Virus record (IMG/VR): IMGVR_UViG_3300046517_002304
Location: 124,001-188,000 of that record
Length of the DNA stretch: 64,000 bases
Reading direction: 5' to 3' (one strand)
In this document: in pieces, positions 28,510 to 44,044 of the stretch
How the letters are laid out: each line of letters starts with the position of its first letter
How positions within the stretch are numbered: the stretch's first letter is position 1
Made by a program: the position numbers and the translations under genes
Notes under the pieces: model-generated
Seen by the model: the letters and a program-made list of their open reading frames with translations, nothing else
Told to the model about the DNA's origin: nothing
Databases searched by the model: none

Positions 28510-28727
28510 GATCGCTCCTTTATTTCTGCTAATCTTTGTTTTCTATGAGGCTCTAGATGTCTTTCGTGCCAGCTTTTGTCTCTCTGGCTGCTAAGGTCAA
28601 TCCAATGTTGAAAATTTTCTGGCTCTACCGGCTCCTCTCCATCGGCAAATTCCACAAAATCAGGCACACATTCTCCCCCTTTAATGTTTGGGTAATACTT
28701 AAGTTTTATATAATACTTCAATTTCAT
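28506..28727 (-). CDS. hypothetical protein
   Basis: 73 aa. Confidence 0.5.
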   Translation of the reverse strand: MKLKYYIKLKYYPNIKGGECVPDFVEFADGEEPVEPENFQHWIDLSSQRDKSWHERHLEPHRKQRLAEIKERS

Positions 28728-28729
28728 TT

Positions 28730-29467
28730 TTAGCTCCTGAGTTTATTAAAAATTGATTCGCTTAATCGTTCTTTTAACTCTAGGTTCATAGACGGAATCT
28801 CGCCGCCCACAAAGCAAGAGTATAAATAACACAAATTATCCATACCGTTTTTATCGGTGGTTGCCTTCTTTAACTTTAAACTAATTTCTTCATAACTGTC
28901 GTCTAAAAACAAACAACCGCCTGGATTTGATTTTGACATTTTAACAGATGGATTTTTTAAATCCTTAATTCTTCCCACTACAATCTCTGGTTCAGGTATA
29001 ACAAAATCTTCGCTGAAAACTCTGTTATATTTTTTTAGTAGCTTAGATGCATACTGAAGATGCTGTGTTTGATCTTCCCCAACAAGTACTTTTTTAAATC
29101 CTGCTACGTCGTGCGTCATCAAAACTGGATACGTTAATAAATGGGCGCTTGGATTAGACGACGACTTGTATTGTGTCATTCTTTCTAAATCGCCCATTGC
29201 GGATATTGAAAGAAGTTTGAAGTAAAATTCGGCATTAAAAACATCCTTTTGAATTATGATTTTAGAAACGCCAAATTTGTTCAGTAGCTCAATGCTATTC
29301 TTGATTTCCTGCCCAGGCGCATGATAGTTAGCAACTAAAACGCTAGCTCCAGCTTTTCCTGGCAGTATTACCGAGAAATAGTGACCAAGATGCAATTTGC
29401 CTGTTGGCCTGAACCCGCACAATTTATCACCAAAGACACACCATGTTTCTTCTCCTGAAAACCCCAT
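28730..29467 (-). CDS. trpS: compact tryptophanyl-tRNA synthetase (true start may be ATG 29444 via +1 frameshift)
   Basis: GFRPTGKLHLGH (HIGH), LERMTQYK, LLTYPVLMTHD, VGEDQTQH, KMSKS. Confidence 0.88.
   Translation of the reverse strand: MGFSGEETWCVFGDKLCGFRPTGKLHLGHYFSVILPGKAGASVLVANYHAPGQEIKNSIELLNKFGVSKIIIQKDVFNAEFYFKLLSISAMGDLERMTQYKSSSNPSAHLLTYPVLMTHDVAGFKKVLVGEDQTQHLQYASKLLKKYNRVFSEDFVIPEPEIVVGRIKDLKNPSVKMSKSNPGGCLFLDDSYEEISLKLKKATTDKNGMDNLCYLYSCFVGGEIPSMNLELKERLSESIFNKLRS
29427..29456 (-). promoter_or_regulatory. SD + 5-codon ORF (MVCLW*) with candidate +1 frameshift site CUU-UGG
   Basis: AGGAG-N7-ATG GTG TGT CTT TGG TGA; +1 slip at CTT.T joins the trpS frame (GGT GAT AAA TTG). Confidence 0.55.
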
Positions 29468-29493
29468 TTTACACTAAAAACTTTACTTGTCAA
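29466..29493 (-). promoter_or_regulatory. sigma70-like promoter for trpS
   Basis: TTGACA (29493-29488)-N16-TAAAAT (29471-29466). Confidence 0.55.
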
Positions 29494-29728
29494 GGCCCTT
29501 AGATGCAGAATAGCGACAGCGCAAGTAGTAAATCAATCCCGTTGGACCAAGTAATGGCTGCACACTTACAAGCTTATTGGCTATGGATGCCGTATTTAAA
29601 TTTTTAAATAGGGGAATAGACATATGAGAAAACATGTTAATATTTTTCCCGCTACACTTTGCGCATACCTGATGTTCATTTAATGGAACCAGTTTATCGG
29701 ATTTATTTCCACAGTAATCGCATATCAT
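29483..29728 (-). CDS. zinc ribbon fused to a major-capsid-protein segment
   Basis: MICDYCG..CAKC followed by 42 aa with 27 identities to MCP residues 71-112. Confidence 0.8.
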   Translation of the reverse strand: MICDYCGNKSDKLVPLNEHQVCAKCSGKNINMFSHMSIPLFKNLNTASIANKLVSVQPLLGPTGLIYYLRCRYSASKGLDK

Positions 29729-29770
29729 AATATACTTATCGTATTATGCTTTAAGACACATAAATAGTAT

Positions 29771-31204
29771 ATGCGATTTCGTGCCTACCTAGAGTCGTTC
29801 GGCTCGTTTAATTATAGGGTTCCCAATGACCCAGAAGAGCAATTATACGACTTCTATATGCTTAATTGGCTTAGGGGCAGAAATTCGCTTTATAACAAAG
29901 CTAATCAACATGGGTTGGCTATCTCACCTAAAAAGCCAGAATATGGCGGTGACATGGGCCATGAAGACAAAATAGATTATATGTTAGATGAAGTCGCACA
30001 TACTCTAATCCCCAAGCTTAAATCCGACTTCCTTAAGGCAGTGCTATTCGGCATTACTGCGGAAATGCGGCATGTGCCTCGTGAAATGGGAGATTATAAA
30101 AATTTTTCGGCTAATATAGCAGACGGCGTCGGCGAGAGATACGCAAAAATATACAATGATTTTTTTAGTTATTATAATTATGATAATTTTAAAGACAAAA
30201 TGGCAGAATTTAATAAATCTGTTCCTGTAAAAGACAGAATGTTTAGAAATGTTAAAAATTTCGTAGATCCGCATAATGCCGATTTTCTTCATTATAATAT
30301 GACCGGTAGAATGGCCGCTTATCGCAGTATGTTAAAAGGCGGCTCTACTGAGAGAGATTTCGTAGAAATGGCTAAATTTACGTTTGCGAACGGTAGTTGG
30401 CAGGCTAGCTATGGTGGCCAACCATGGGCAAATGCTTGTGATGGATGGCTGCAATTATATGATTCAAAAGGTGAAAATTCTGATATAGTCGCCATTGATC
30501 ACATTTATGATCTACAGCATAATAATGGTTCTGTTTTAAATAAAGTAGCTAAGTATATTAAGGGGGGAAATACTACATGGCTCAAAACTGCTTTGGATGA
30601 TAAGGCGCAGTCTAATGGTCCGATGGATATAGTGGATAAAGTATCGTCAAGCATGAGAGAACTAGCTTTGCCGGCCATAAAATTAAAATTTGGAACAACG
30701 TATCAAGACAAGGCATCTGCGGAAATTTCACCATATAAAGGCTCTTATGAAAACCAATATTTTTTGACTGGCCATGACTGGAGTGCCTACGAAGGAGCTT
30801 ATCATAGTTCTTCAATTCCTGAATTAAAGTTAGTGCGACTTGGGCTATATCTTGGTTGGTCGCCTAAAAAGGTTACATTAAAGGATATTGAAAGGTTAAA
30901 AAATACTTTAAAAGTTCCTCAGTTAGATGACGCGCGGATAAAGAAAGTGCTTACATCTGAATACAATAATAAAAGAAACATAGAAACTGGTAACTTTAAA
31001 TATGTAAAGGTTAAATTAAGTAGTGATTTAATACGGGAAATAGACAAATTTATAAGGCTAAAAGACACCTGGCTATATGAAGCAGTAGTTAAAAAAATAG
31101 ACAGTGAAACTCATTATGGATATGCAGCATCAAAATACTTATATGGCTACTGCGCATCATTAGTCGGTAAACAAAGAAGTATAGATGAGGTCGTAGAGCC
31201 ATGA
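29771..31204 (+). CDS. putative internal head protein, paralog 1
   Basis: 477 aa; MRFRAYLES; YGGQPW..ACD.W, IDHIYDLQHNNG; TAAATA 4 nt upstream. Confidence 0.7.
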   Translation: MRFRAYLESFGSFNYRVPNDPEEQLYDFYMLNWLRGRNSLYNKANQHGLAISPKKPEYGGDMGHEDKIDYMLDEVAHTLIPKLKSDFLKAVLFGITAEMRHVPREMGDYKNFSANIADGVGERYAKIYNDFFSYYNYDNFKDKMAEFNKSVPVKDRMFRNVKNFVDPHNADFLHYNMTGRMAAYRSMLKGGSTERDFVEMAKFTFANGSWQASYGGQPWANACDGWLQLYDSKGENSDIVAIDHIYDLQHNNGSVLNKVAKYIKGGNTTWLKTALDDKAQSNGPMDIVDKVSSSMRELALPAIKLKFGTTYQDKASAEISPYKGSYENQYFLTGHDWSAYEGAYHSSSIPELKLVRLGLYLGWSPKKVTLKDIERLKNTLKVPQLDDARIKKVLTSEYNNKRNIETGNFKYVKVKLSSDLIREIDKFIRLKDTWLYEAVVKKIDSETHYGYAASKYLYGYCASLVGKQRSIDEVVEP

Positions 31205-32607
31205 GATTCTCTCAATTTATAGAATCTTTTGGTTCATTTAATTATCGTGTTCCCGATGATCCAGAAGAACAATTATATGACTTCTATATGTTGAATTTGC
31301 TAAGAGGCAGAAATTCGCTTTATAACAAGGCTAATCAACATGGCTTAACCATAATGCCTAAGAAGCCAGAGTACGGCGGCGAAATGAATCATGAAGATAA
31401 AGTAGACTACATGCTGGATGAAGTGGCAAAAGTTCTTATACCAAAACTTAAATCAGATTTATTAGAAGCGGTTCTTTTTAGTATAACGGCAGAATTTAGA
31501 CATGGTGGCGACCGAGATACGCAAGAAATACCAATGAGCCATATGACAGATATGATTCGTAGACAAATGGGCGCTAAATATTCTAGAATATTTAGCGATT
31601 TTTTTAACCATTTAGACTCTTCTTTTGATGCATCGTTTAGGCCAAAAATTCAAGCAAATTCTCAATTGATGAAAAACACTATTAACAGTACTCCTATCTA
31701 TAACAGTAGAAGATTGGCATCTTATTCATCGATGGAAAAAAGTACCCATAATGAAAAAGACTTTGTAGAAATGGCTAAATTTGTTTTTGGGGAGGGGGAT
31801 TGGGACAAAGATTACGGTGGTCCTTCATGGGAACAGGCTTGTGATGCATGGCTCCAACTGTATAATTCTAAATCAGAAGATTCAGACATTATAGCGATTG
31901 ATCATATGTACGATATAGAGCACAATACAGGGAACATTCTTGACAAGAGCAATCACTTTTTAAAGAACGGGCAATTTACATGGCTCAGTAATGCCCTTAA
32001 TAAAAAAGCTAGAATTACTTCTCCGATGCAAATCATTGACGATATTTCTCCAGCAATGACACAAATAGCCTTGCCTGCCATAAAGTTAAAGTATGGCCAA
32101 ACATTAGAAGATAAAATGAAGGCTGATACATTTAAAACACAGATCCCAGGAGCTGGGTTTGATGACTTAATTAAAAAGGAATTTGACGAAAATCAAGGAA
32201 TATATGATGCAGGTATTCCTGAACTAAAAATGGCTAGAACTCTTAGGGGAATTTTAGCTGCTTATAAAGTGCGTAGAATTGACTTTAGAATCATTGAATT
32301 AGCTAAGTCTAAAATTAGAGTCCCATTAGACAGTCAAAAAATTAAACAGTTCTTTCAGCAAGAGTATCAAAATTGCAGAAATATAGAAACTGGTAACTTT
32401 GGTCATGTTAAGGTGCTTATGACTAAAGATTTAATATACGAAATACAAAAAAATTTAGAAGATCCATATGGCCATAGATCAGGAATAAAAGACAGAATAG
32501 CCGGTGAAACAAATTATGACGATGAAGTTATTAAGAGTTTAGTAGATTACTGTGAAAAGTTAGTTGAAGATGGCGGAAATGTTAGCTCAATATTAGCGGT
32601 TCGCTAA
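31201..32607 (+). CDS. putative internal head protein, paralog 2
   Basis: 468 aa; MRFSQFIES; first ~100 aa very similar to paralog 1. Confidence 0.7.
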   Translation: MRFSQFIESFGSFNYRVPDDPEEQLYDFYMLNLLRGRNSLYNKANQHGLTIMPKKPEYGGEMNHEDKVDYMLDEVAKVLIPKLKSDLLEAVLFSITAEFRHGGDRDTQEIPMSHMTDMIRRQMGAKYSRIFSDFFNHLDSSFDASFRPKIQANSQLMKNTINSTPIYNSRRLASYSSMEKSTHNEKDFVEMAKFVFGEGDWDKDYGGPSWEQACDAWLQLYNSKSEDSDIIAIDHMYDIEHNTGNILDKSNHFLKNGQFTWLSNALNKKARITSPMQIIDDISPAMTQIALPAIKLKYGQTLEDKMKADTFKTQIPGAGFDDLIKKEFDENQGIYDAGIPELKMARTLRGILAAYKVRRIDFRIIELAKSKIRVPLDSQKIKQFFQQEYQNCRNIETGNFGHVKVLMTKDLIYEIQKNLEDPYGHRSGIKDRIAGETNYDDEVIKSLVDYCEKLVEDGGNVSSILAVR

Positions 32608-33137
32608 GCTTCATTACCCCAGCAATACCAGCCTTCTCTTTTAGCTCTAGCATACATGTCTAATCGTGGTTCTGGCGATAGCTTTTCTACTAGCTTATAG
32701 AAATCATCTGGTTTCTCGCTATGCCTGCCTCTATCCCATGAAAAGCATGTTCCACTAGTAGCCTGTGAATGCCGTCCACCCATTCCAAAAGGATTTCCGT
32801 GTCTACTTCCTACCCGAGACACAAGTATATGTTCTGTATTACATCTAAAACGTCCTACGCCAAGCCCTGGCTTCTTCCAAGTCCAAAGTATGATTGGTTT
32901 AGCCTTCCATGCGCCAGCGACCGTATAGGCCCAATCTACGTGTTGTGCAAGGCACCATATGTATAAGTGTGCCTGTTTGGCAATCGGCGGCTTGATAGAA
33001 CAGATTTCGTCTAAGCTTAATGTGTTATAATGAGATTGTGGACTGCCCTTGGGCGCTTTTCCATTAATAATTGACATTTCTGGTGTCCAAGGCGGGTCAA
33101 CCACTATTGTGCGAAACTCTACATCAGGAAATTGCAT
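32604..33137 (-). CDS. MT-A70 family adenine methyltransferase
   Basis: IVVDPPW, LYIW, W.KPGLGVG..R.NTEH, HSEKP, MYAR..REGW..WGNE. Confidence 0.9.
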   Translation of the reverse strand: MQFPDVEFRTIVVDPPWTPEMSIINGKAPKGSPQSHYNTLSLDEICSIKPPIAKQAHLYIWCLAQHVDWAYTVAGAWKAKPIILWTWKKPGLGVGRFRCNTEHILVSRVGSRHGNPFGMGGRHSQATSGTCFSWDRGRHSEKPDDFYKLVEKLSPEPRLDMYARAKREGWYCWGNEA

Positions 33138-33166: not shown

Positions 33167-33394
33167 ATGAAAACCTGGACCCAATACTGCGAAAATATGC
33201 CAAATTATGCTACCTCTGCTCGTCCGATGACGGCAGGTGGATTTAATGGAACAGTTAACCTAGGGCAGGCTAACTTACAATTAGTTGGGCAAGCATTGCA
33301 GATAGATAGCGGAACTCACAGCATAAGGCTTCCGCTAACATCACAACAGGTTCAGCAGATACAAAAAGAAGTAGGATCAGGATTAGGTAGATAA
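33167..33394 (+). CDS. small putative internal protein (IP-like)
   Basis: MKTWTQYCE; TAAATA 6 nt upstream. Confidence 0.65.
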   Translation: MKTWTQYCENMPNYATSARPMTAGGFNGTVNLGQANLQLVGQALQIDSGTHSIRLPLTSQQVQQIQKEVGSGLGR

Positions 33395-33395
33395 T

Positions 33396-33614
33396 ATGAA
33401 AACTTGGACTCAATATCTAGAGGCTGTAGGCACACCAGCACCAGCAATTTTTATGCCAGGACTCTTTAATGGTCTAACAAACTTGGGGCCAGTAAGCGTA
33501 AGGGTAGTTGGCAATATACTACAAATACAAACCAATAGGGATGCGTCTAATCTAGTTCTTACAATGCCACAGATTCAGCAGCTTAAGCGAGATTTTAACT
33601 TAACGGTTATTTAG
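33396..33614 (+). CDS. small putative internal protein (IP-like), paralog
   Basis: MKTWTQYLE; G.FNG..NLG..VG..LQI..LT..Q.QQ shared with the previous gene. Confidence 0.65.
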   Translation: MKTWTQYLEAVGTPAPAIFMPGLFNGLTNLGPVSVRVVGNILQIQTNRDASNLVLTMPQIQQLKRDFNLTVI

Positions 33615-34583: not shown

Positions 34584-34946
34584 ATGAAGGAAGTTAAATC
34601 AGTAGAAGAAATAAAGTGTACCGACGACTTCAATAAGGAAGTGATTGTCAGCAAGCAATGTCTGCACACTGGTGTGATTTATTACTTTCTTAAAGGTGCT
34701 TGGACACCAGTTTATCCGCAAGAGGATGGCACATTCAGGTATCCATATAATTGCAATACAGTTATGCAGATAATGACATTGACGCCTGTAGTGGAGCGAA
34801 AGTCTTTGGTTGAAAGGCTCAGGGATCAGTCTAATAGTCCATCTTGGATTGTAAGACTTAGTAGTCGTCTTATGATTTTTAAATTGAAATGCGAATCTTT
34901 ATTAGATTCAGAAAAACCTTGGGTTGAAAGGTGGTTGGGGGAATGA
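34584..34946 (+). CDS. hypothetical protein
   Basis: 120 aa, SD AAGGA. Confidence 0.55.
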   Translation: MKEVKSVEEIKCTDDFNKEVIVSKQCLHTGVIYYFLKGAWTPVYPQEDGTFRYPYNCNTVMQIMTLTPVVERKSLVERLRDQSNSPSWIVRLSSRLMIFKLKCESLLDSEKPWVERWLGE

Positions 34947-35134
34947 TTGTAATTAGTGCTGAGTATAAGGAAATACCTATTAGCCAACCTATGGCTGAAT
35001 TTAAAAGAATTAGCATTCCTTTGATAAGAAGGATTTATCCTAGTTTAATTGACATGAGAAGTGATCTTTTCAGTATTAGAGGAGATTATGTTATTAGAAC
35101 GATAGATAGCGCTTATGAACATGGCTATGATTGA
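34943..35134 (+). CDS. small protein carrying major-capsid residues 65-83
   Basis: AEFKRISIPLIRRIYPSLI vs MCP ANFKRISIPLVRRIFPQLI (15/19); ATGA coupling with the upstream gene. Confidence 0.75.
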   Translation: MIVISAEYKEIPISQPMAEFKRISIPLIRRIYPSLIDMRSDLFSIRGDYVIRTIDSAYEHGYD

Positions 35135-35146
35135 TCGTATGATATT

Positions 35147-35365
35147 ATGAAGCTAAAAACAACTTGGAAATTTTGCGAAGAAATGAAAGAGATTCCAGAT
35201 AATACACGGCGGGATTTATTGCGCAATCTACTAAAGGACGAAGATGCATCATGGGGAACATCTAGAAGCGCAGAAGAAATGGAAAAACAATTAGATTATT
35301 TAATGGGATGTGGCGACAATCCTAGCGTAGCTCCAGTCAATGAAGAAATCAAAATCGGGACTTGA
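35147..35365 (+). CDS. small protein resembling the MCP N-terminus
   Basis: Ungapped K...TW-x8-I.D.T.R.....L alignment to MCP residues 17-48. Confidence 0.5.
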   Translation: MKLKTTWKFCEEMKEIPDNTRRDLLRNLLKDEDASWGTSRSAEEMEKQLDYLMGCGDNPSVAPVNEEIKIGT

Positions 35366-35665
35366 ACTATAATCAAGGTAGCCGAAGTCCATTCTACTTG
35401 GCCAGATGCCTTCTAGTGTGTAGGACTTTTCTCCGAATGATAGGACGCCGGTGCCAGTCGTCTTCTCTCCGTTATAATGATAGCAGTGAGACATAATCTC
35501 AAATATGCACTTAGGTTCGCCCATTTGATCACCATCATCGTGGAATTTGGTCTTTAGGCTTTCTCCAGAGTTGTTCTCAAGAATTTCTGGGTTAATGACT
35601 TGGAAGTTGTCTATGTGGCATTCTAGGCCATTAGGGAACGTAAGCTCCAATGTGTAATTGTTCAT
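35300..35665 (-). CDS. miniature T4 gp19-like tail tube protein
   Basis: GTGVL..YTLEGIWPSRMDFGYLDYSSS...WSY matches the gp19 C-terminal motif; 121 aa. Confidence 0.6.
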   Translation of the reverse strand: MNNYTLELTFPNGLECHIDNFQVINPEILENNSGESLKTKFHDDGDQMGEPKCIFEIMSHCYHYNGEKTTGTGVLSFGEKSYTLEGIWPSRMDFGYLDYSSSPDFDFFIDWSYARIVATSH

Positions 35666-35768: not shown

Positions 35769-37616
35769 ATGGGAAAAGAACGAGTAAGAACAACGATAGA
35801 ATATATTGCCAAGGCCAAAAATAAATGGAATGGATATTTTACATATCCGAATACTATTTTTATTGGCCGGTTTGGCAAAATTGAATTTGAGTGTCCAGTA
35901 CATGGCGCTATGACAATGACGGCTAGAGCACATCTAGATTCTGGTTGTAACAAATGTAATGGATATTTTAAGCACACTGGGGCAACGGCAAAAGCCAAAA
36001 TGCTCCAAATACATGGGTATTTTTGCGACTATTCTAAAATACCCGATGAATTAGAATTCGGAGTCAATACTATTGTAGAAATAGGTTGCCCTAAACATGG
36101 ATTCTTTAAAATCAAAATTGAAGACCATTTTAATGCGGTGCATCCATGCCGTAGCTGTGCCAATGAAGCTAGGGGAATTGCTAATAAAAAAACAACAGAA
36201 GAATGGATATCTGAAGCAAAACTTAAATGGGGCCAAACGTGTAATTATGACAAATCGGTTTATGTAAATAAAGAAACCTATATTGATATTTATTGTATTT
36301 ATCATGGGTGGATAAAACAGAAACCGAATAATCATGTAGAAAATGGATGCCATCATTGTAGCGGCCGTGGTATTGGCAAGCATGACAGATATAGCTTTAT
36401 TAAAAGGGCGATACAAATTAATGGATATATTTATGATTACTCTAAAGTATTAGATAATTTTAGTGGATTAAACTCTGTTATAGAACTAGGATGTCCAACG
36501 CATGGGTGGTTTAAAGTTGTAGCGGCTAATCATCTTACAGAAGGACGAGGATGCTCAAAATGTAATGGTGGTGTTTTTTATACACATAATGACTTCTTAG
36601 AAAAGGCAAATAAAAAGCATAATAATAAATTCAAATATCTATCAAAATATACTAGATCACATGATCCAATTACGATAGAGTGCTCTAAGCACGGTGTATT
36701 TGAACAGTTGGCCTATGTCCATCTTCAGTCAATCCATGCTTGCCAGAAGTGTGCTGCTGAATTAGGGCAATCCGCTGGCGAAAACGAGGTAGCGGATTAT
36801 ATCGCCAATTTAGGCATTAATATTATTAGAAATGACAATACTTTTCTTGGGAAGTCAAAAGAAATAGATATTTACTTACCCGATCAAAAGGTTGGAATTG
36901 AATATTGTGGCCTTTATTACCATAGGGAAGGCATGCAGACATATAAATTTAACCATAATATTAAAACTAATTTAGCAGATGAAAAAAATATATTTTTAAT
37001 TCATTTGTTTGACAAGGAATGGAAAGAGCAAAAAGAAATTGTTAAATCTAGGATATCTGGCATATTGGGGAAAAATAAGACGATATATGCTAAAAACACA
37101 GAGATAGTTCAATTACATAAATACGAAAAAGATAAATTTTTACAGGAAACGCATATACAAGGAAAAGATAATTCCAGTATTTATTTCGGCTTAAAATATA
37201 AGGATCAGATTGTTTCATGCATGACATTTGGGCACCCAAGATTTAATAAAAACTATAACTGGGAAATGCTTAGGTTTAGTTCTATTTTGTATACCCATAT
37301 AGTGGGCGGAGCTAGCAAGCTGTTGTCTCACTTTAGAAAAATTTATCCAGGAACAATTATTTCTTACGCTGACAGGAGATGGTCACAAGGAAAGTTGTAT
37401 TACATATTAGGATTTAACTTAGATAAAGTTACAGAGCCTAGTTATCATTATTATAATGTTTCTACACATGCATTTCATAATCGTCTAAAATTTCAAAAGT
37501 ATAAGCTTAAAGATATGCCTTATTATGATGAAAAATTAACCGAAGAAGAAATTATGATGTTAAATGGATATGATAGAGTTTGGGATGCAGGACAAATGCG
37601 GTTTGTTCTTAAGTAA
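35769..37616 (+). CDS. Hef-like/DUF723-repeat homing endonuclease
   Basis: Repeated YDYSK..CP.HG.F...H...CxxC modules; EIDIYLP..GIEYCG.YYH nuclease; C-terminal GGASKLL..ISYADRRWS domain. Confidence 0.8.
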   Translation: MGKERVRTTIEYIAKAKNKWNGYFTYPNTIFIGRFGKIEFECPVHGAMTMTARAHLDSGCNKCNGYFKHTGATAKAKMLQIHGYFCDYSKIPDELEFGVNTIVEIGCPKHGFFKIKIEDHFNAVHPCRSCANEARGIANKKTTEEWISEAKLKWGQTCNYDKSVYVNKETYIDIYCIYHGWIKQKPNNHVENGCHHCSGRGIGKHDRYSFIKRAIQINGYIYDYSKVLDNFSGLNSVIELGCPTHGWFKVVAANHLTEGRGCSKCNGGVFYTHNDFLEKANKKHNNKFKYLSKYTRSHDPITIECSKHGVFEQLAYVHLQSIHACQKCAAELGQSAGENEVADYIANLGINIIRNDNTFLGKSKEIDIYLPDQKVGIEYCGLYYHREGMQTYKFNHNIKTNLADEKNIFLIHLFDKEWKEQKEIVKSRISGILGKNKTIYAKNTEIVQLHKYEKDKFLQETHIQGKDNSSIYFGLKYKDQIVSCMTFGHPRFNKNYNWEMLRFSSILYTHIVGGASKLLSHFRKIYPGTIISYADRRWSQGKLYYILGFNLDKVTEPSYHYYNVSTHAFHNRLKFQKYKLKDMPYYDEKLTEEEIMMLNGYDRVWDAGQMRFVLK

Positions 37617-37627
37617 TATTAGTCGAA

Positions 37628-37655
37628 TAAAAAACCCCCGATTTCTCGGGGGTTT
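37628..37655 (-). terminator. intrinsic terminator of the capsid gene
   Basis: AAACCCCCGA-GAAA-TCGGGGGTTTTTT on the minus strand. Confidence 0.9.
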
Positions 37656-37683: not shown

Positions 37684-39135
37684 TTAGATGCTGAAATTGT
37701 TGATAGCGATGGTAGCGTAGAAGCGTGCACCGTTATTTAGTAATTTAAGTCCGTATCTTGTCATCAAGCCTCTACGTGGGCAGAAGCTATTAGGGTCAAG
37801 TACCAGTGGAGTCTGCATTAAAGGAACGTATGGGCAATAGAAGAACCCTGAATCCATATAAGTATCACCCTTATAACCCATGAGTAGGTTATTGGTTGGG
37901 AACTGTGGATCCTTATAAAGCTTCCAACGGTTGCTGACAGTACCGACATACTGAACGCCTAGCGAGCTAGTGAACGATTCTGAAGGTGCTGGAGCGAAAC
38001 CTGCTGTGGCTGTCTCAAAGATTGAGGCAACTTCAGGTGAGCAGATAATCCAGTTTGCACCGCTACGTAGCGTTTTCTTATGGATGATGTTGCTAACCTG
38101 TGAAACCTTAACGAATAGGGCTTCGTACTTTTCCTTAACGGTATCACCTAGGGCAGTGTTGTAATCCCAAGTGACGTTAGTACCAGCGTTGTTACGGAGG
38201 TTGGTGATGATTTCACGGTCAATTTCAAGATTGATTTCTTGAGCAAGAACGGTCGTCAATTCCTGTTCCGCATCTAGCGAATACTGTGAACGTAAGTCCT
38301 GTTGAGCTTCAAAGCTCCAGACAGCGCGTAGCTTACGGGTAACGGCGGTAATGGTTTCCTGTTCAACCGTTAGATTAACTTCGGGCTGATCAGTATTGCA
38401 TTCCATGTTATAGTCGTAAGTGACGACGATGCTGTTAGTGCTAGGATCGCTTGACCAAGTTAGAGTGATGGCACCAGTCGTGAGATTGATGCTACCAGCG
38501 GTAACGTTTGGTGAATTGCTCGTAGAACTAATAGTAAAGGTACCCGACGCATCAATGGTGAAGGTCTGAATGGCAGTGCTACCCTGGTAGATAGTACCTG
38601 ATTCAGTTCCAGCAAGAATTGGCGTGTGCTTTAGAGTGTAAGTAAGAGTAGTTGTACCACCAGCGTTGGTGACGGTTTCAAGACTGACAGTCTGGCTAGA
38701 ATAGAAAATATCAAGATTTACTAGACCGCTTGAGAGCTGTTGTAGTGAAAGAGCATCGTCTGTTGGGAAACTAGACTTGTTAGTCGCACCTAGTGTAGCA
38801 CCCTTGTCAGTCGCATAGCGAAAGCGGAGGTAATAAACTAGACCGACTGGACCGAGTAATGGCTGAACAGAAACGATCTTGTTAGCGATTAGCTGTGGGA
38901 AAATACGACGAACGAGGGGGATACTAATACGTTTGAAGTTAGCGACATCGCCTGCGGTCGTGCTTGAAGATTCGTTGAGGTTGCATGATAGTTCCTGATT
39001 TTCCATTAGGATGGCAGTGTTCTGACGAACTGTCTTATCCTTAATGTCGTTCAGGAGACCACGGTCGCCCCAAGTTTTTTCGCACTTGGCACCTTCGTGT
39101 AAAAATTCCCCTTTGGCTGTACCAAAATTTGACAT
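37684..39135 (-). CDS. gp23: major capsid protein, T4 gp23 family
   Basis: ENQE, VRR..P.LIA...VQP..GP.G, RKLRAVWSFEAQQDL, EINLEIDREI, FYCPYVPL, F.P..GLMTRYG; probable cleavage at LNE55. Confidence 0.96.
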   Translation of the reverse strand: MSNFGTAKGEFLHEGAKCEKTWGDRGLLNDIKDKTVRQNTAILMENQELSCNLNESSSTTAGDVANFKRISIPLVRRIFPQLIANKIVSVQPLLGPVGLVYYLRFRYATDKGATLGATNKSSFPTDDALSLQQLSSGLVNLDIFYSSQTVSLETVTNAGGTTTLTYTLKHTPILAGTESGTIYQGSTAIQTFTIDASGTFTISSTSNSPNVTAGSINLTTGAITLTWSSDPSTNSIVVTYDYNMECNTDQPEVNLTVEQETITAVTRKLRAVWSFEAQQDLRSQYSLDAEQELTTVLAQEINLEIDREIITNLRNNAGTNVTWDYNTALGDTVKEKYEALFVKVSQVSNIIHKKTLRSGANWIICSPEVASIFETATAGFAPAPSESFTSSLGVQYVGTVSNRWKLYKDPQFPTNNLLMGYKGDTYMDSGFFYCPYVPLMQTPLVLDPNSFCPRRGLMTRYGLKLLNNGARFYATIAINNFSI

Positions 39136-42724: not shown

Positions 42725-44044
42725 GTGCCTAAAAAACTTACTACTGAACAGTTCGTTGAAAAAGCTATAAAAGTGCATGGGGAGCGGTACGATTATAGTT
42801 TGGTGGAGTATATTAGCAATAAGGTGATGGTGCAGATAATTTGTCCATTACACGGTATTTTTGAACAAAGACCCGATGGACATTTATCTAGCATTGTTGG
42901 CGGGTGTCCCGAATGTGGGCGGATACAAGTCATACAAACCAAAAAAGACCATGGCTTAAGTCATACCGTAGAATATCAAACGTGGCATAGAATGATGAGC
43001 AGATGTTATAATAAAAACCATCATCATTATTTGGACTATGGAGCACGAGGTATTATGGTTTGTGAAAGGTGGCATGATTTTTTAAACTTTTTAGAAGACA
43101 TGGGACTAAGACCAGTAAATTTATCTTTAGATAGGATTGATTGTAATGGCAATTATTGTCCTGAAAATTGTAGATGGTCAAGCAATAAAGAACAACTTAA
43201 TAATAGAAGAAATGTTAAAAAATATACCGTTAATGGCATGACCAAAACGCTTACTGGATGGTGTGAAGAAACTGGATTATCTTATAAATGTTTAAGTAAT
43301 AGGTTTCGCAACGGGTGGAGCATTGAAGATGCTATTAATACGCCTAAAATTACCTATAACAAGAAGGATGGCAATGAAGTTAAAAAGAAAAAATCTTCAT
43401 CTAAAGAGGTAATAATTATTAAAGAAAAAACACTTGAAGATTTTAAAAATAAATGTAATTTTAAAGATATATCTGGCAAAAAAATCGGCACTTTGACTGC
43501 GATTAAGCCGCTTGGAATTAATTGCTACGGACAAGTGGTATGGCTTTTTACATGTGAGTGCGGAGATAAAATTAATTATATATGCAGAGGCCGCCTATGC
43601 GAAAGATGTAATTCACCAAGGTTTGCCAAGATTACTAATCCCAAAGAGTATGGCACATGGTGTCGTATGATTGAGAGATGTAAAAATGACATAGATTATA
43701 TTAATAAAAACGTTACTGTTTGTCCAAGATGGCTAGATGGTTTTGATAACTTTCTTGCCGACATGGGGATGTCGCCTCATTATAAATGTAGTCTAGATAG
43801 AATTAATAATAACTTAGGTTATTACAAAGGAAATTGTAGGTGGGCTACCGATGAGCAGCAACAAAGAAATAAAAGCGATACTATCATGCTTACAGTTAAT
43901 GGCGAAACCAAACCGCTTGTTGAATGGTGTGAAATTACGGGAATGTCCAGATCTTGCCTAAGGTCAAGAATTCAATCCGGCTGGTCTGTAGAAGATGCTG
44001 TACTAACTCCTTTTCGTAAAATTAAAAGAAAAAACCCTGTATAA
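42725..44044 (+). CDS. homing endonuclease: DUF723-like + two HNH modules
   Basis: VHGERYDYS..CPLHG; SLDRIDCNGNYCPENCRW and SLDRINNNLGYYKGNCRW. Confidence 0.85.
   Translation: MPKKLTTEQFVEKAIKVHGERYDYSLVEYISNKVMVQIICPLHGIFEQRPDGHLSSIVGGCPECGRIQVIQTKKDHGLSHTVEYQTWHRMMSRCYNKNHHHYLDYGARGIMVCERWHDFLNFLEDMGLRPVNLSLDRIDCNGNYCPENCRWSSNKEQLNNRRNVKKYTVNGMTKTLTGWCEETGLSYKCLSNRFRNGWSIEDAINTPKITYNKKDGNEVKKKKSSSKEVIIIKEKTLEDFKNKCNFKDISGKKIGTLTAIKPLGINCYGQVVWLFTCECGDKINYICRGRLCERCNSPRFAKITNPKEYGTWCRMIERCKNDIDYINKNVTVCPRWLDGFDNFLADMGMSPHYKCSLDRINNNLGYYKGNCRWATDEQQQRNKSDTIMLTVNGETKPLVEWCEITGMSRSCLRSRIQSGWSVEDAVLTPFRKIKRKNPV

What the first reader, a model, noticed from the sequence alone, without database searches (positions are those of the whole stretch)
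35300..35665. Shortened tail-tube (gp19-like) paralog
Seen: a 121-aa ORF ending GTGVL..YTLEGIWPSRMDFGYLDYSSSPDFDFFIDWSY. Established: WP...FG.LDY is the C-terminal signature of gp19-family tube proteins, which are longer. Inference: it lacks polymerisation loops and could act as a DSR2-type sensor decoy or a tube chain terminator.
Basis: partly seen in the sequence, partly recalled or inferred. Interest (0 to 1): 0.6.

Follow-up and report, generated by a model that had tools for sequence, protein, structure and literature searches.

The report
Short accessory tail-tube paralogue
A 511-kb soil phage carries, far from its tail genes, a real 121-residue stripped-down copy of its tail-tube protein that keeps the core fold but has lost the two parts that stack tube rings, so it probably mimics the tube rather than builds it.

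Summary
Window 35300..35665 (minus strand) is a 121-aa ORF with good coding statistics. Its C-terminal two thirds are homologous to the phage's own gp19/PF06841 tail-tube proteins (hhalign probability 98.1%, E 6.6e-14). An AlphaFold model (pLDDT 86.7) aligns over 113 of 121 residues with solved tube proteins (Z 11.8; T4 gp19 Z 9.2).

It is not a random fragment. It covers the whole beta-sandwich plus helix but lacks the N-terminal arm and the beta-hairpin segment, the two parts that make ring-to-ring contacts in myophage tubes. Three other short proteins (106-126 aa) from other metagenomes and from the closest relative, LR756511.1, share the same deletions and form a supported clade.

The family is patchy: two (near-)complete related genomes lack it. 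It never sits by a sheath gene. It lies among small ORFs, DNA methyltransferases, a homing endonuclease or a PARG gene. In three genomes an off-module tube paralogue lies within 3 kb of small ORFs that copy pieces of the major capsid protein.

Best reading: an accessory, non-polymerising tube mimic. The decoy and terminator ideas remain untested. There are no expression data.

The parts
35300..35665 (-). 121-aa ORF (q121): minimal paralogue of the tail-tube protein; the stop codon is 35300-35302
   Evidence: ORF listing; coding score 0.128, best of six frames; AlphaFold model pLDDT 86.7, pTM 0.78; tube-fold matches at Z 11.8 over 113 residues
35315..35563 (-). Residues 35-117: the part with statistically supported homology to PF06841 tubes (third strand of the model, alpha-helix, last four strands)
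   Evidence: hhalign probability 98.1%, E 6.6e-14 against 54 tube proteins
35303..35428 (-). Residues 80-121: the WP..FG.LDY.SS signature and the last two strands, homologous up to the final residue
   Evidence: BLASTP to the phage's own 188-aa tube, E 1e-6, 33% identity over 42 residues; genome-wide profile hit E 5.3e-6
35561..35596 (-). Residues 24-35: a short loop with a helical turn where full-length tubes carry a segment about 20 residues longer, the hairpin region
   Evidence: Alignments; model secondary structure; hairpin role from PMC11972413
35666..35768 (.). 103-bp divergent intergenic region shared with the homing endonuclease gene; it must hold q121's own promoter. No Shine-Dalgarno sequence, which is usual in this genome
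   Evidence: Sequence; upstream regions of other genes
35147..35365 (+). 72-aa ORF converging on q121 and overlapping its last 22 codons; function unknown
   Evidence: coding score 0.159; no family match
34931..35134 (+). 67-aa ORF (63 aa from the ATG at 34943) copying the N-arm motif of the major capsid protein; lies 166 bp from q121
   Evidence: 68-75% identity to capsid residues 63-84; coding score 0.134
35769..37616 (+). 615-aa free-standing homing endonuclease between q121 and the capsid gene
   Evidence: phrog_559, E 5.6e-117
37632..37655 (.). 10-bp GC-rich hairpin terminator between the capsid gene and the endonuclease gene; it separates q121 from the head operon
37684..39135 (-). Gp23-type major capsid protein, the last gene of the conserved protease-scaffold-capsid block
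   Evidence: PF07068, E 2.8e-86; synteny with LR756511.1 ends here

Best explanation
q121 is a genuine accessory gene that encodes the bare core of a contractile-tail tube protein.

What is shown:
- It descends from the main-tube (sheath-adjacent) type of PF06841 protein.
- It keeps the beta-sandwich and the flanking helix.
- It has lost the N-terminal arm and the hairpin segment.
- It shares these deletions with three other 106-126-aa proteins that form one clade.
- It lies outside the tail module, in a non-syntenic region of small ORFs.

What is inferred: without either ring-stacking part it cannot be a building block of a stacked tube. Instead it acts in trans as a non-polymerising mimic of the tube core. 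It would occupy a surface that normally receives a tube subunit, either a host sensor of tube protein (decoy or blocker) or a tail-assembly partner of this phage or a competing one.

Confidence is at least 0.9 for the identity part and about 0.45 for the mimic mechanism. Within that, the immune-decoy sub-case is about 0.2.
For: Homology and fold:
- hhalign probability 98.1%.
- Only three places in the genome match the tube profile.
- The model has pLDDT 86.7.
- All 50 best structural matches are tube-family proteins. The top ones are Pa193 tube and Afp5 at Z 11.8; T4 gp19 scores Z 9.2.

Shared deletions of the arm and the hairpin segment appear in four short proteins. These are the inter-ring parts in a solved myophage tube (PMC11972413).

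The lineage is maintained rather than debris:
- The short proteins are only about 22-35% identical to each other, yet all are intact ORFs of similar size.
- They form a starred clade (96/91) inside a starred clade of divergent off-module paralogues (97/89).
- q121 has good coding statistics.

Accessory character:
- The family is present in G000 and in LR756511.1. It is absent from G001 (91% complete) and G002 (100% complete).
- It never sits next to a sheath gene.
- Neighbours are DNA methyltransferases, a homing endonuclease and a microbial PARG.
- The region downstream of the capsid gene is not syntenic with the closest relative.

Off-module tube paralogues lie within 3 kb of small ORFs that copy capsid pieces in three genomes.
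Against: - There is no expression evidence. No RNA run holds the sequence, and contigs from four other soil and rhizosphere studies are identical, so selection cannot be read from variants.
- The family has only four known members.
- The first 34 residues are placed only by the MSA-guided model, and that MSA was made of tube proteins. The single-sequence model was poor (pLDDT 54.8).
- Tree branches are long, so clustering could partly be long-branch attraction.
- Structural genes are often scattered in huge phages, so position is weak evidence.
- No binding partner is known.
- A mimic that keeps a sensed epitope could trigger a sensor rather than block it. One known tube sensor, Avs16, reads the hairpin that q121 lacks (PMC12803255).
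Confidence: 0.45

Rival explanations
1. q121 is a minor structural ring of the phage's own virion. It could be a tube cap or terminator, a neck or head-completion ring, or a baseplate-proximal adaptor, recruited from a tube paralogue.
For: Tube-fold proteins fill all these roles in solved tails. gp3-type completion proteins and the baseplate-proximal tube protein Afp5 are among the best matches. Head-completion proteins also have a tube-like sandwich (PMC11972413). The gene lies 2 kb from the head module. From my own knowledge, lambda gpU-type terminators are about 130 aa and lack the hairpin.
Against: The family is absent from two related (near-)complete genomes. Its position differs between G000 and LR756511.1. 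It is not co-transcribed with the head operon, because a terminator and an opposed endonuclease gene intervene. The gp15-like stabiliser, sheath, tube and hub sit together 60 kb away. It has lost both parts that grip neighbouring rings.
Confidence: 0.25
2. q121 is a decaying remnant of a duplicated or displaced tube allele. It was left by endonuclease-driven recombination, is still open by chance, and has no function.
For: It lies beside a homing endonuclease in a genome full of them. Partial capsid copies lie nearby. There are no expression data.
Against: It covers the whole fold with clean internal deletions rather than a truncation. The same deletions occur in three other intact ORFs that are only about 22-35% identical. 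Its coding statistics equal those of the capsid gene. It is no closer to its own genome's tubes than to foreign relatives, so it is old.
Confidence: 0.12
3. q121 forms a free Hcp-like hexameric ring that chaperones or carries small phage proteins. It neither mimics nor caps the tube.
For: Hcp proteins, including chains of about 120 residues, are good fold matches at Z 9-10. The intra-ring sandwich is retained.
Against: Its sequence kinship is to phage tubes, not to Hcp. No cargo or partner gene is conserved next to the four family members.
Confidence: 0.08

Closest known systems
T4 gp19 / Pfam PF06841 contractile-tail tube proteins, including this phage's own 188-aa and 212-aa tubes
   Same: Homologous over residues 35-117, with the same WP..FG.LDY.SS signature and the same beta-sandwich plus helix.
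   Different: It is 121 aa against 160-220 aa. It has no N-terminal arm with the K-F-R-W start, no hairpin segment and no DGCG turn. It is not next to a sheath gene and falls below the Pfam threshold.
Afp5 / Pvc5, the baseplate-proximal tube proteins of extracellular contractile injection systems (6rao_F, 6j0n_n)
   Same: These are the best Foldseek and near-best VIA matches (E 4e-6, TM 0.65; Z 11.8 and 11.2).
   Different: Identity is 12-13% and they are 149 aa. They are encoded within their tail operon and built into the particle.
Tail-tube terminators and completion proteins (T4 gp3, lambda gpU type)
   Same: They have a tube-like core and form a ring that does not propagate the tube. T4 neck chain 9mkb_AC scores Z 9.3, and gp3-like proteins appear among the viral hits.
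   Different: There is no sequence match to these families. q121 is not in the tail or neck module and is not conserved among relatives.
Short Hcp proteins of Bacteroidota T6SS (7yw0, 6bdc, 8gra)
   Same: Chains of about 120-127 residues with the same fold (Z about 9).
   Different: There is no sequence kinship and no secretion-system context.
DSAD1 and other phage inhibitors of structure-sensing immunity; prophage and satellite tail-assembly blockers Tab and Tai
   Same: These are possible functional analogues: small accessory proteins that interfere with sensing of tube protein or with tail assembly (PMC10981675, PMC10884400, PMC11364771).
   Different: No homology was tested or is claimed. 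From my own knowledge, none of them is described as a copy of a tube protein.

Membership tests
PF06841 / gp19 tail-tube family | Match to the Pfam HMM above the gathering score | tested here: not met
   No Pfam family at E<=1. The phage's 212-aa tube passes (34.4 bits). Its 188-aa tube scores only 18.8 bits.
PF06841 / gp19 tail-tube family | Profile-level homology to bona fide members | tested here: met
   hhalign probability 98.1%, E 6.6e-14. Clade HMM gives E 5.3e-6. phmmer hits to phrog_4542 tubes give E 8.6e-6.
PF06841 / gp19 tail-tube family | Beta-sandwich flanked by one long helix | tested here: met
   Model with pLDDT 86.7. T4 gp19 (5w5f) scores Z 9.2, rmsd 3.1, 108 residues aligned. 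The best tube match scores Z 11.8. Caveat: the MSA was made of tube proteins.
PF06841 / gp19 tail-tube family | N-terminal extension and extended hairpin that make the inter-ring interface | tested here: not met
   Both are missing in the alignments and in the model. Their role is taken from PMC11972413.
PF06841 / gp19 tail-tube family | Polymerises into stacked hexameric rings inside a sheath | not testable with these tools
   The gene is 62 kb from the sheath-tube pair. No assembly data exist.
Tube terminator / completion proteins (gp3, gpU type) | Family sequence match, position in the tail or neck module, and conservation among relatives | tested here: not met
   No PHROGs hit. The family is absent from G001 and G002. 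The gp15-like stabiliser sits by the sheath.
Tube initiators (T4 gp48 / gp54) | Tube core with large N- and C-terminal insertions that reach into the baseplate | tested here: not met
   q121 is the bare core of 121 aa. Initiator chains (5iv5_BG, 9f4a_BQ) are 192-295 residues. Initiator anatomy is from PMC11972413.
Anti-defence decoy of a tube sensor (DSR2 / Avs16 type) | Binds the sensor and changes its activity | not testable with these tools
   Only context is available: methyltransferase and PARG neighbours. Avs16 reads the hairpin that q121 lacks.

The most novel reading that the evidence does not exclude
Huge soil phages of this clade keep islands of small genes that copy parts of their two most abundant virion proteins: a hairpin-less tube core, and capsid-protein pieces, some fused to a zinc ribbon. 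These would act as molecular mimics against host immunity that senses virion structures, or against co-infecting relatives.
Probability: 0.2. Interest if true: 0.8.

Novelty: new variant of a known kind. Interest (0 to 1): 0.55.

Why it matters
Tube and capsid proteins are now known to be main triggers of bacterial immune sensors such as DSR2 and the Avs families (PMC10981675, PMC12803255). A phage-encoded copy of the tube core that cannot stack would be a simple way to blunt such sensing or to disturb tail assembly, and no such mimic has been described as far as I know.

Even if q121 proves structural, it defines the smallest phage member of the tube fold seen among the matches here: every top viral structural match has at least 133 residues. 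It also marks which parts of the protein can be lost.

The recurrent capsid-piece ORFs beside these paralogues suggest a wider, unstudied gene class in huge phages.

Tried and rejected
- **Family scans and similarity searches.** Pfam and PHROGs scans of q121 gave no hit. tblastn against 50,697 phage records gave only two weak, unrelated hits. megablast of the region gave nothing.
- **Word-based protein search.** It found only q121 itself.
- **Pattern scans.** The scan of viral contigs found only a 5.6-kb contig 100% identical to the window. The metagenome scan found nothing.
- **PDB sequence search.** With the single sequence it returned only a chance ribosomal-protein hit.
- **Single-sequence AlphaFold.** The model was too poor to use (pLDDT 54.8).
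- **Complex prediction of the 188-aa tube with q121.** No verdict (median score 0.09, controls not run). This is neither for nor against binding.
- **Promoter-class search by k-mer enrichment.** No class separated late genes from early genes.
- **Reads.** The phage occurs in six soil and rhizosphere studies. The four runs laid showed no variants, indels or joints, and no RNA run holds the sequence, so there is no test of selection or expression.
- **ESM Atlas.** The features search pointed to DUF2804-like beta proteins (score 0.95). I rejected this because the Pfam scan shows no such match and the Atlas's own model is poor.
- **Split gene or missing exon.** Rejected. The ORF starts at the first strand of the fold, and no tube N-terminus is encoded nearby.
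- **Co-transcription with the capsid operon.** Rejected because of the terminator and the opposed endonuclease gene.
- **The G8 run upstream of the start.** Not unusual: two such runs occur in the genome and about two are expected.
- **Conserved neighbour genes among the family members.** None were found.

Full report
**1. What is there**

The window is bases 124001-188000 of a 511,233-bp virus record with direct terminal repeats. GC content is 39%. Its closest named relative is LR756511.1, an unannotated 595-kb 'uncultured phage' whose major capsid protein is 60.7% identical. The same sequence occurs in six soil and rhizosphere studies.

At 35300..35665 on the minus strand lies a 121-aa ORF, here called q121, with the quoted C-terminal text. 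It begins at the first possible start codon of a 144-codon open frame. Under a 3-periodic Markov model trained on the genome's long ORFs it scores 0.128 bits per codon. That is the best of its six frames, equal to the capsid gene (0.124), and above the median of non-overlapped ORFs of 100-150 aa (0.107). Shadow ORFs have a median of -0.10.

**2. Kinship with tube proteins**

Pfam and PHROGs do not detect q121. The genome does hold two PF06841 (T4 gp19) proteins:
- A 188-aa protein directly after a 769-aa sheath gene and a gp15-like sheath stabiliser.
- A 212-aa protein 3 kb away.

q121 matches the C-termini of exactly these two proteins, with BLASTP E 1e-6 and 1e-5. A profile of 54 tube proteins from related huge phages hits three places in the whole genome: the two tubes and q121 (E 5.3e-6).

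An exhaustive HMMER search of 1.84 billion representative proteins found four relatives:
- Two short proteins, P0002 (121 aa) and P0005 (106 aa).
- Two full-length proteins, P0003 (169 aa) and P0004 (201 aa), which PHROGs names tail tube.

hhalign of the short trio against the 54 tubes gives probability 98.1%, E 6.6e-14, over q121 residues 35-117. A profile of short and long members finds solved tube proteins first: a phage tail protein, Pvc1, the KP1 tube, Afp1 and Afp5.

**3. Fold**

With a 57-row alignment AlphaFold gives pLDDT 86.7 and pTM 0.78. The model has seven strands and one long helix at residues 49-62.
- Foldseek against the PDB returns only tube-family proteins. The first is Afp5 (E 4.1e-6, TM 0.65).
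- VIA-align gives Z 11.8 over 113 residues at rmsd 2.8-2.9 to the Pa193 tube and to Afp5. It gives Z 9.2 to T4 gp19 (5w5f) and Z 9.3 to a 175-residue chain of the T4 neck. Hcp proteins and lambda gpV score about Z 9.
- Viral predicted structures give tube and gp3-like completion proteins, all of at least 133 residues.

Caveat: the alignment used for the model consists of tube proteins, and the single-sequence model was poor.

**4. What is missing**

The alignments show four losses relative to full-length tubes, including 162-aa T4-sized ones:
- The N-terminal arm of about 20-25 residues and the conserved K-F-R-W start of the first strand.
- About 20 residues in the segment after the second strand.
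- A loop after the helix.
- The DGCG turn.

In the model, residues 24-35 form a short loop with a helical turn where a hairpin would be.

In the solved myophage phiTE tube, an extended hairpin between strands 2 and 5 and an 18-residue N-terminal extension make the inter-ring interface. The luminal sheets of the sandwich join side by side into the 24-stranded barrel of one ring (PMC11972413). So q121 keeps the intra-ring core and has lost both stacking parts. The mapping of the deletions onto those parts is by alignment and model, not by an experimental structure.

**5. A small lineage, not debris**

A fourth short member (126 aa) lies in LR756511.1 at 591.2 kb, 125 kb from its tandem tubes. 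All four short proteins share the same deletions and a variant motif, FG(Y/T)(L/M)(D/E)Y.S..(D/E/N)FD..(I/V).W.

In a maximum-likelihood tree, the three short proteins that were included form a starred clade (96/91). That clade sits inside a starred clade (97/89) with P0003, P0004 and a divergent 182-aa paralogue of record G003. All of these nest within the sheath-adjacent tube type. Branches are long, so the placement is provisional.

Members are only about 22-35% identical, and q121 is no closer to its own genome's tubes than to foreign relatives. The lineage is therefore old and has stayed open.

**6. Distribution and context**

Related IMG/VR records carry two to four full-length tube paralogues, mostly in tandem. 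The short form is absent from G001 (91% complete) and G002 (100% complete).

No member of the divergent clade is next to a sheath gene. The neighbours are:
- DNA methyltransferases of two different families, placed directly after P0002 and one small ORF after P0005.
- A tRNA nucleotidyltransferase and an Hsp20 in G003.
- An endonuclease VII-like gene beside P0004, and a tail-fibre-like gene beside P0003.
- A microbial PARG (PF10021, E 1.8e-12) and many small zinc-ribbon ORFs in LR756511.1.

In the window, q121 stands alone on the minus strand. A 615-aa homing endonuclease diverges from it, and a plus-strand cluster of small ORFs converges on it, with a 66-nt overlap with a 72-aa ORF.

A 10-bp GC-rich terminator lies between the capsid gene and the endonuclease gene. 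The protease-scaffold-capsid block is syntenic with LR756511.1, but synteny ends at the capsid gene. An MT-A70 methyltransferase lies 2.2 kb away. Methyltransferases are common in this genome: my calls found at least six. Their presence near q121 therefore carries little weight.

**7. A wider pattern: capsid pieces**

Small ORFs that copy pieces of the capsid protein recur across the clade.
- In the window, an 81-aa ORF (29483..29728, minus strand) joins a CxxC...CxxC zinc ribbon to capsid residues 61-113. Identity is 53%, and the Pfam Gp23 score of 33.9 bits is above the cut-off.
- A 67-aa ORF (34931..35134, plus strand) copies residues 63-84 and lies 166 bp from q121.
- In LR756511.1 a 99-aa ORF joins a zinc ribbon to capsid residues 425-468, 3 kb from the short tube.
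- In G003 an ORF 44-46% identical to capsid residues about 121-251 abuts the 182-aa tube paralogue.

Within G000, small ORFs that match a fragment of a larger protein are few. Apart from one repeat family, the capsid accounts for two of the five cases.

If the pieces were scattered uniformly, all three co-locations within 3 kb would have a probability of about 1e-4 (my own arithmetic). Clustering of accessory genes in variable regions would raise that figure.

**8. How it most likely works**

Shown: q121 is a real-looking gene for a hairpin-less, arm-less tube core. It belongs to a maintained, patchy lineage that lies off the tail module.

Inferred: it cannot build a stacked tube and acts as a mimic of the tube core. 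Which surface it occupies is open. The patchy distribution, fast evolution, variable position and neighbours are typical of counter-defence or competition genes, but this is circumstantial. The candidates are:
- A host sensor of tube protein.
- The sheath or a tail-assembly partner.
- The lateral face of another tube subunit.

A structural role (cap, neck ring or adaptor) is the main rival, and a relic is less likely. The complex prediction gave no verdict, and there are no RNA or variant data.

**9. Comparison and verdict**

By descent and fold q121 is a member of the gp19 tube superfamily. It fails the features that make a tube subunit polymerise, and it is not a gp48/gp54 initiator or a recognised terminator.

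I rate it a new variant of a known kind. The decoy and terminator functions remain hypotheses.

The read call used 5,901 letters.

Noticed in passing
window 29483..29728 (-): An 81-aa ORF fuses an N-terminal CxxC...CxxC zinc ribbon to a copy of capsid residues 61-113 (53% identity; Pfam Gp23 33.9 bits, above the cut-off). From memory, this capsid segment corresponds to the Gol region of T4 gp23 that triggers the Lit protease; I did not test that.
   Followed up: partly
window 34931..35134 (+): A 67-aa ORF (63 aa from the ATG at 34943) carries the capsid N-arm motif (68-75% identity over about 20 residues). It has good coding statistics and lies 166 bp from q121.
   Followed up: partly
L118:2515-2814 (+) in LR756511.1; G003 200072-200491; G004 98769-99125; G002 296129-296392; G001 66373-66588: Capsid-piece ORFs recur across related huge phages in four classes: N-arm, insertion domain (residues 121-251), residues 305-424, and residues 415-468. 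The LR756511.1 one is again a zinc-ribbon fusion. Three genomes place one within 3 kb of an off-module tube paralogue.
   Followed up: partly
G000 28616-29917 (-), outside the window; L099:136-657 (+); L010:6569-7471 (+): An Hsp20-like domain and a domain resembling the capsid insertion domain occur together. They share one 434-aa frame in G000 and are neighbouring genes in G003. A protein with the insertion-like domain also lies 6 kb from tube paralogue P0004.
   Followed up: no
window 35769..37616 (+), 42725..44044 (+); G000 96010-97065 (-), 102846-103886 (-): Many free-standing homing endonucleases (HNH, DUF723-repeat and LAGLIDADG types) sit beside structural genes: the capsid gene, the tube gene and the sheath region.
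   Followed up: no
window 33167..33394 (+), 33396..33614 (+), 35147..35365 (+): Three small ORFs (72-75 aa) start with similar text (MKTWTQY... / MKLKTTWKF...), which suggests a small paralogous family of unknown function around q121.
   Followed up: no
window 28730..29467 (-): A 245-aa ORF matches class I tRNA synthetases W/Y (PF00579, E 1e-28) but is shorter than usual. It lies directly after the 81-aa capsid-piece ORF.
   Followed up: no
window 35300..35365: q121 and the 72-aa plus-strand ORF converge and overlap by 66 nt. Both frames have positive coding scores.
   Followed up: partly
G000 92694-93572 (+), 101404-102153 (+); window 32604..33137 (-); others at G000 54, 123, 142 and 206 kb: The genome carries an unusually large number of DNA methyltransferase genes, at least six by my calls. 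Two sit inside or next to the tail module, one of them directly before the 212-aa tube paralogue.
   Followed up: no
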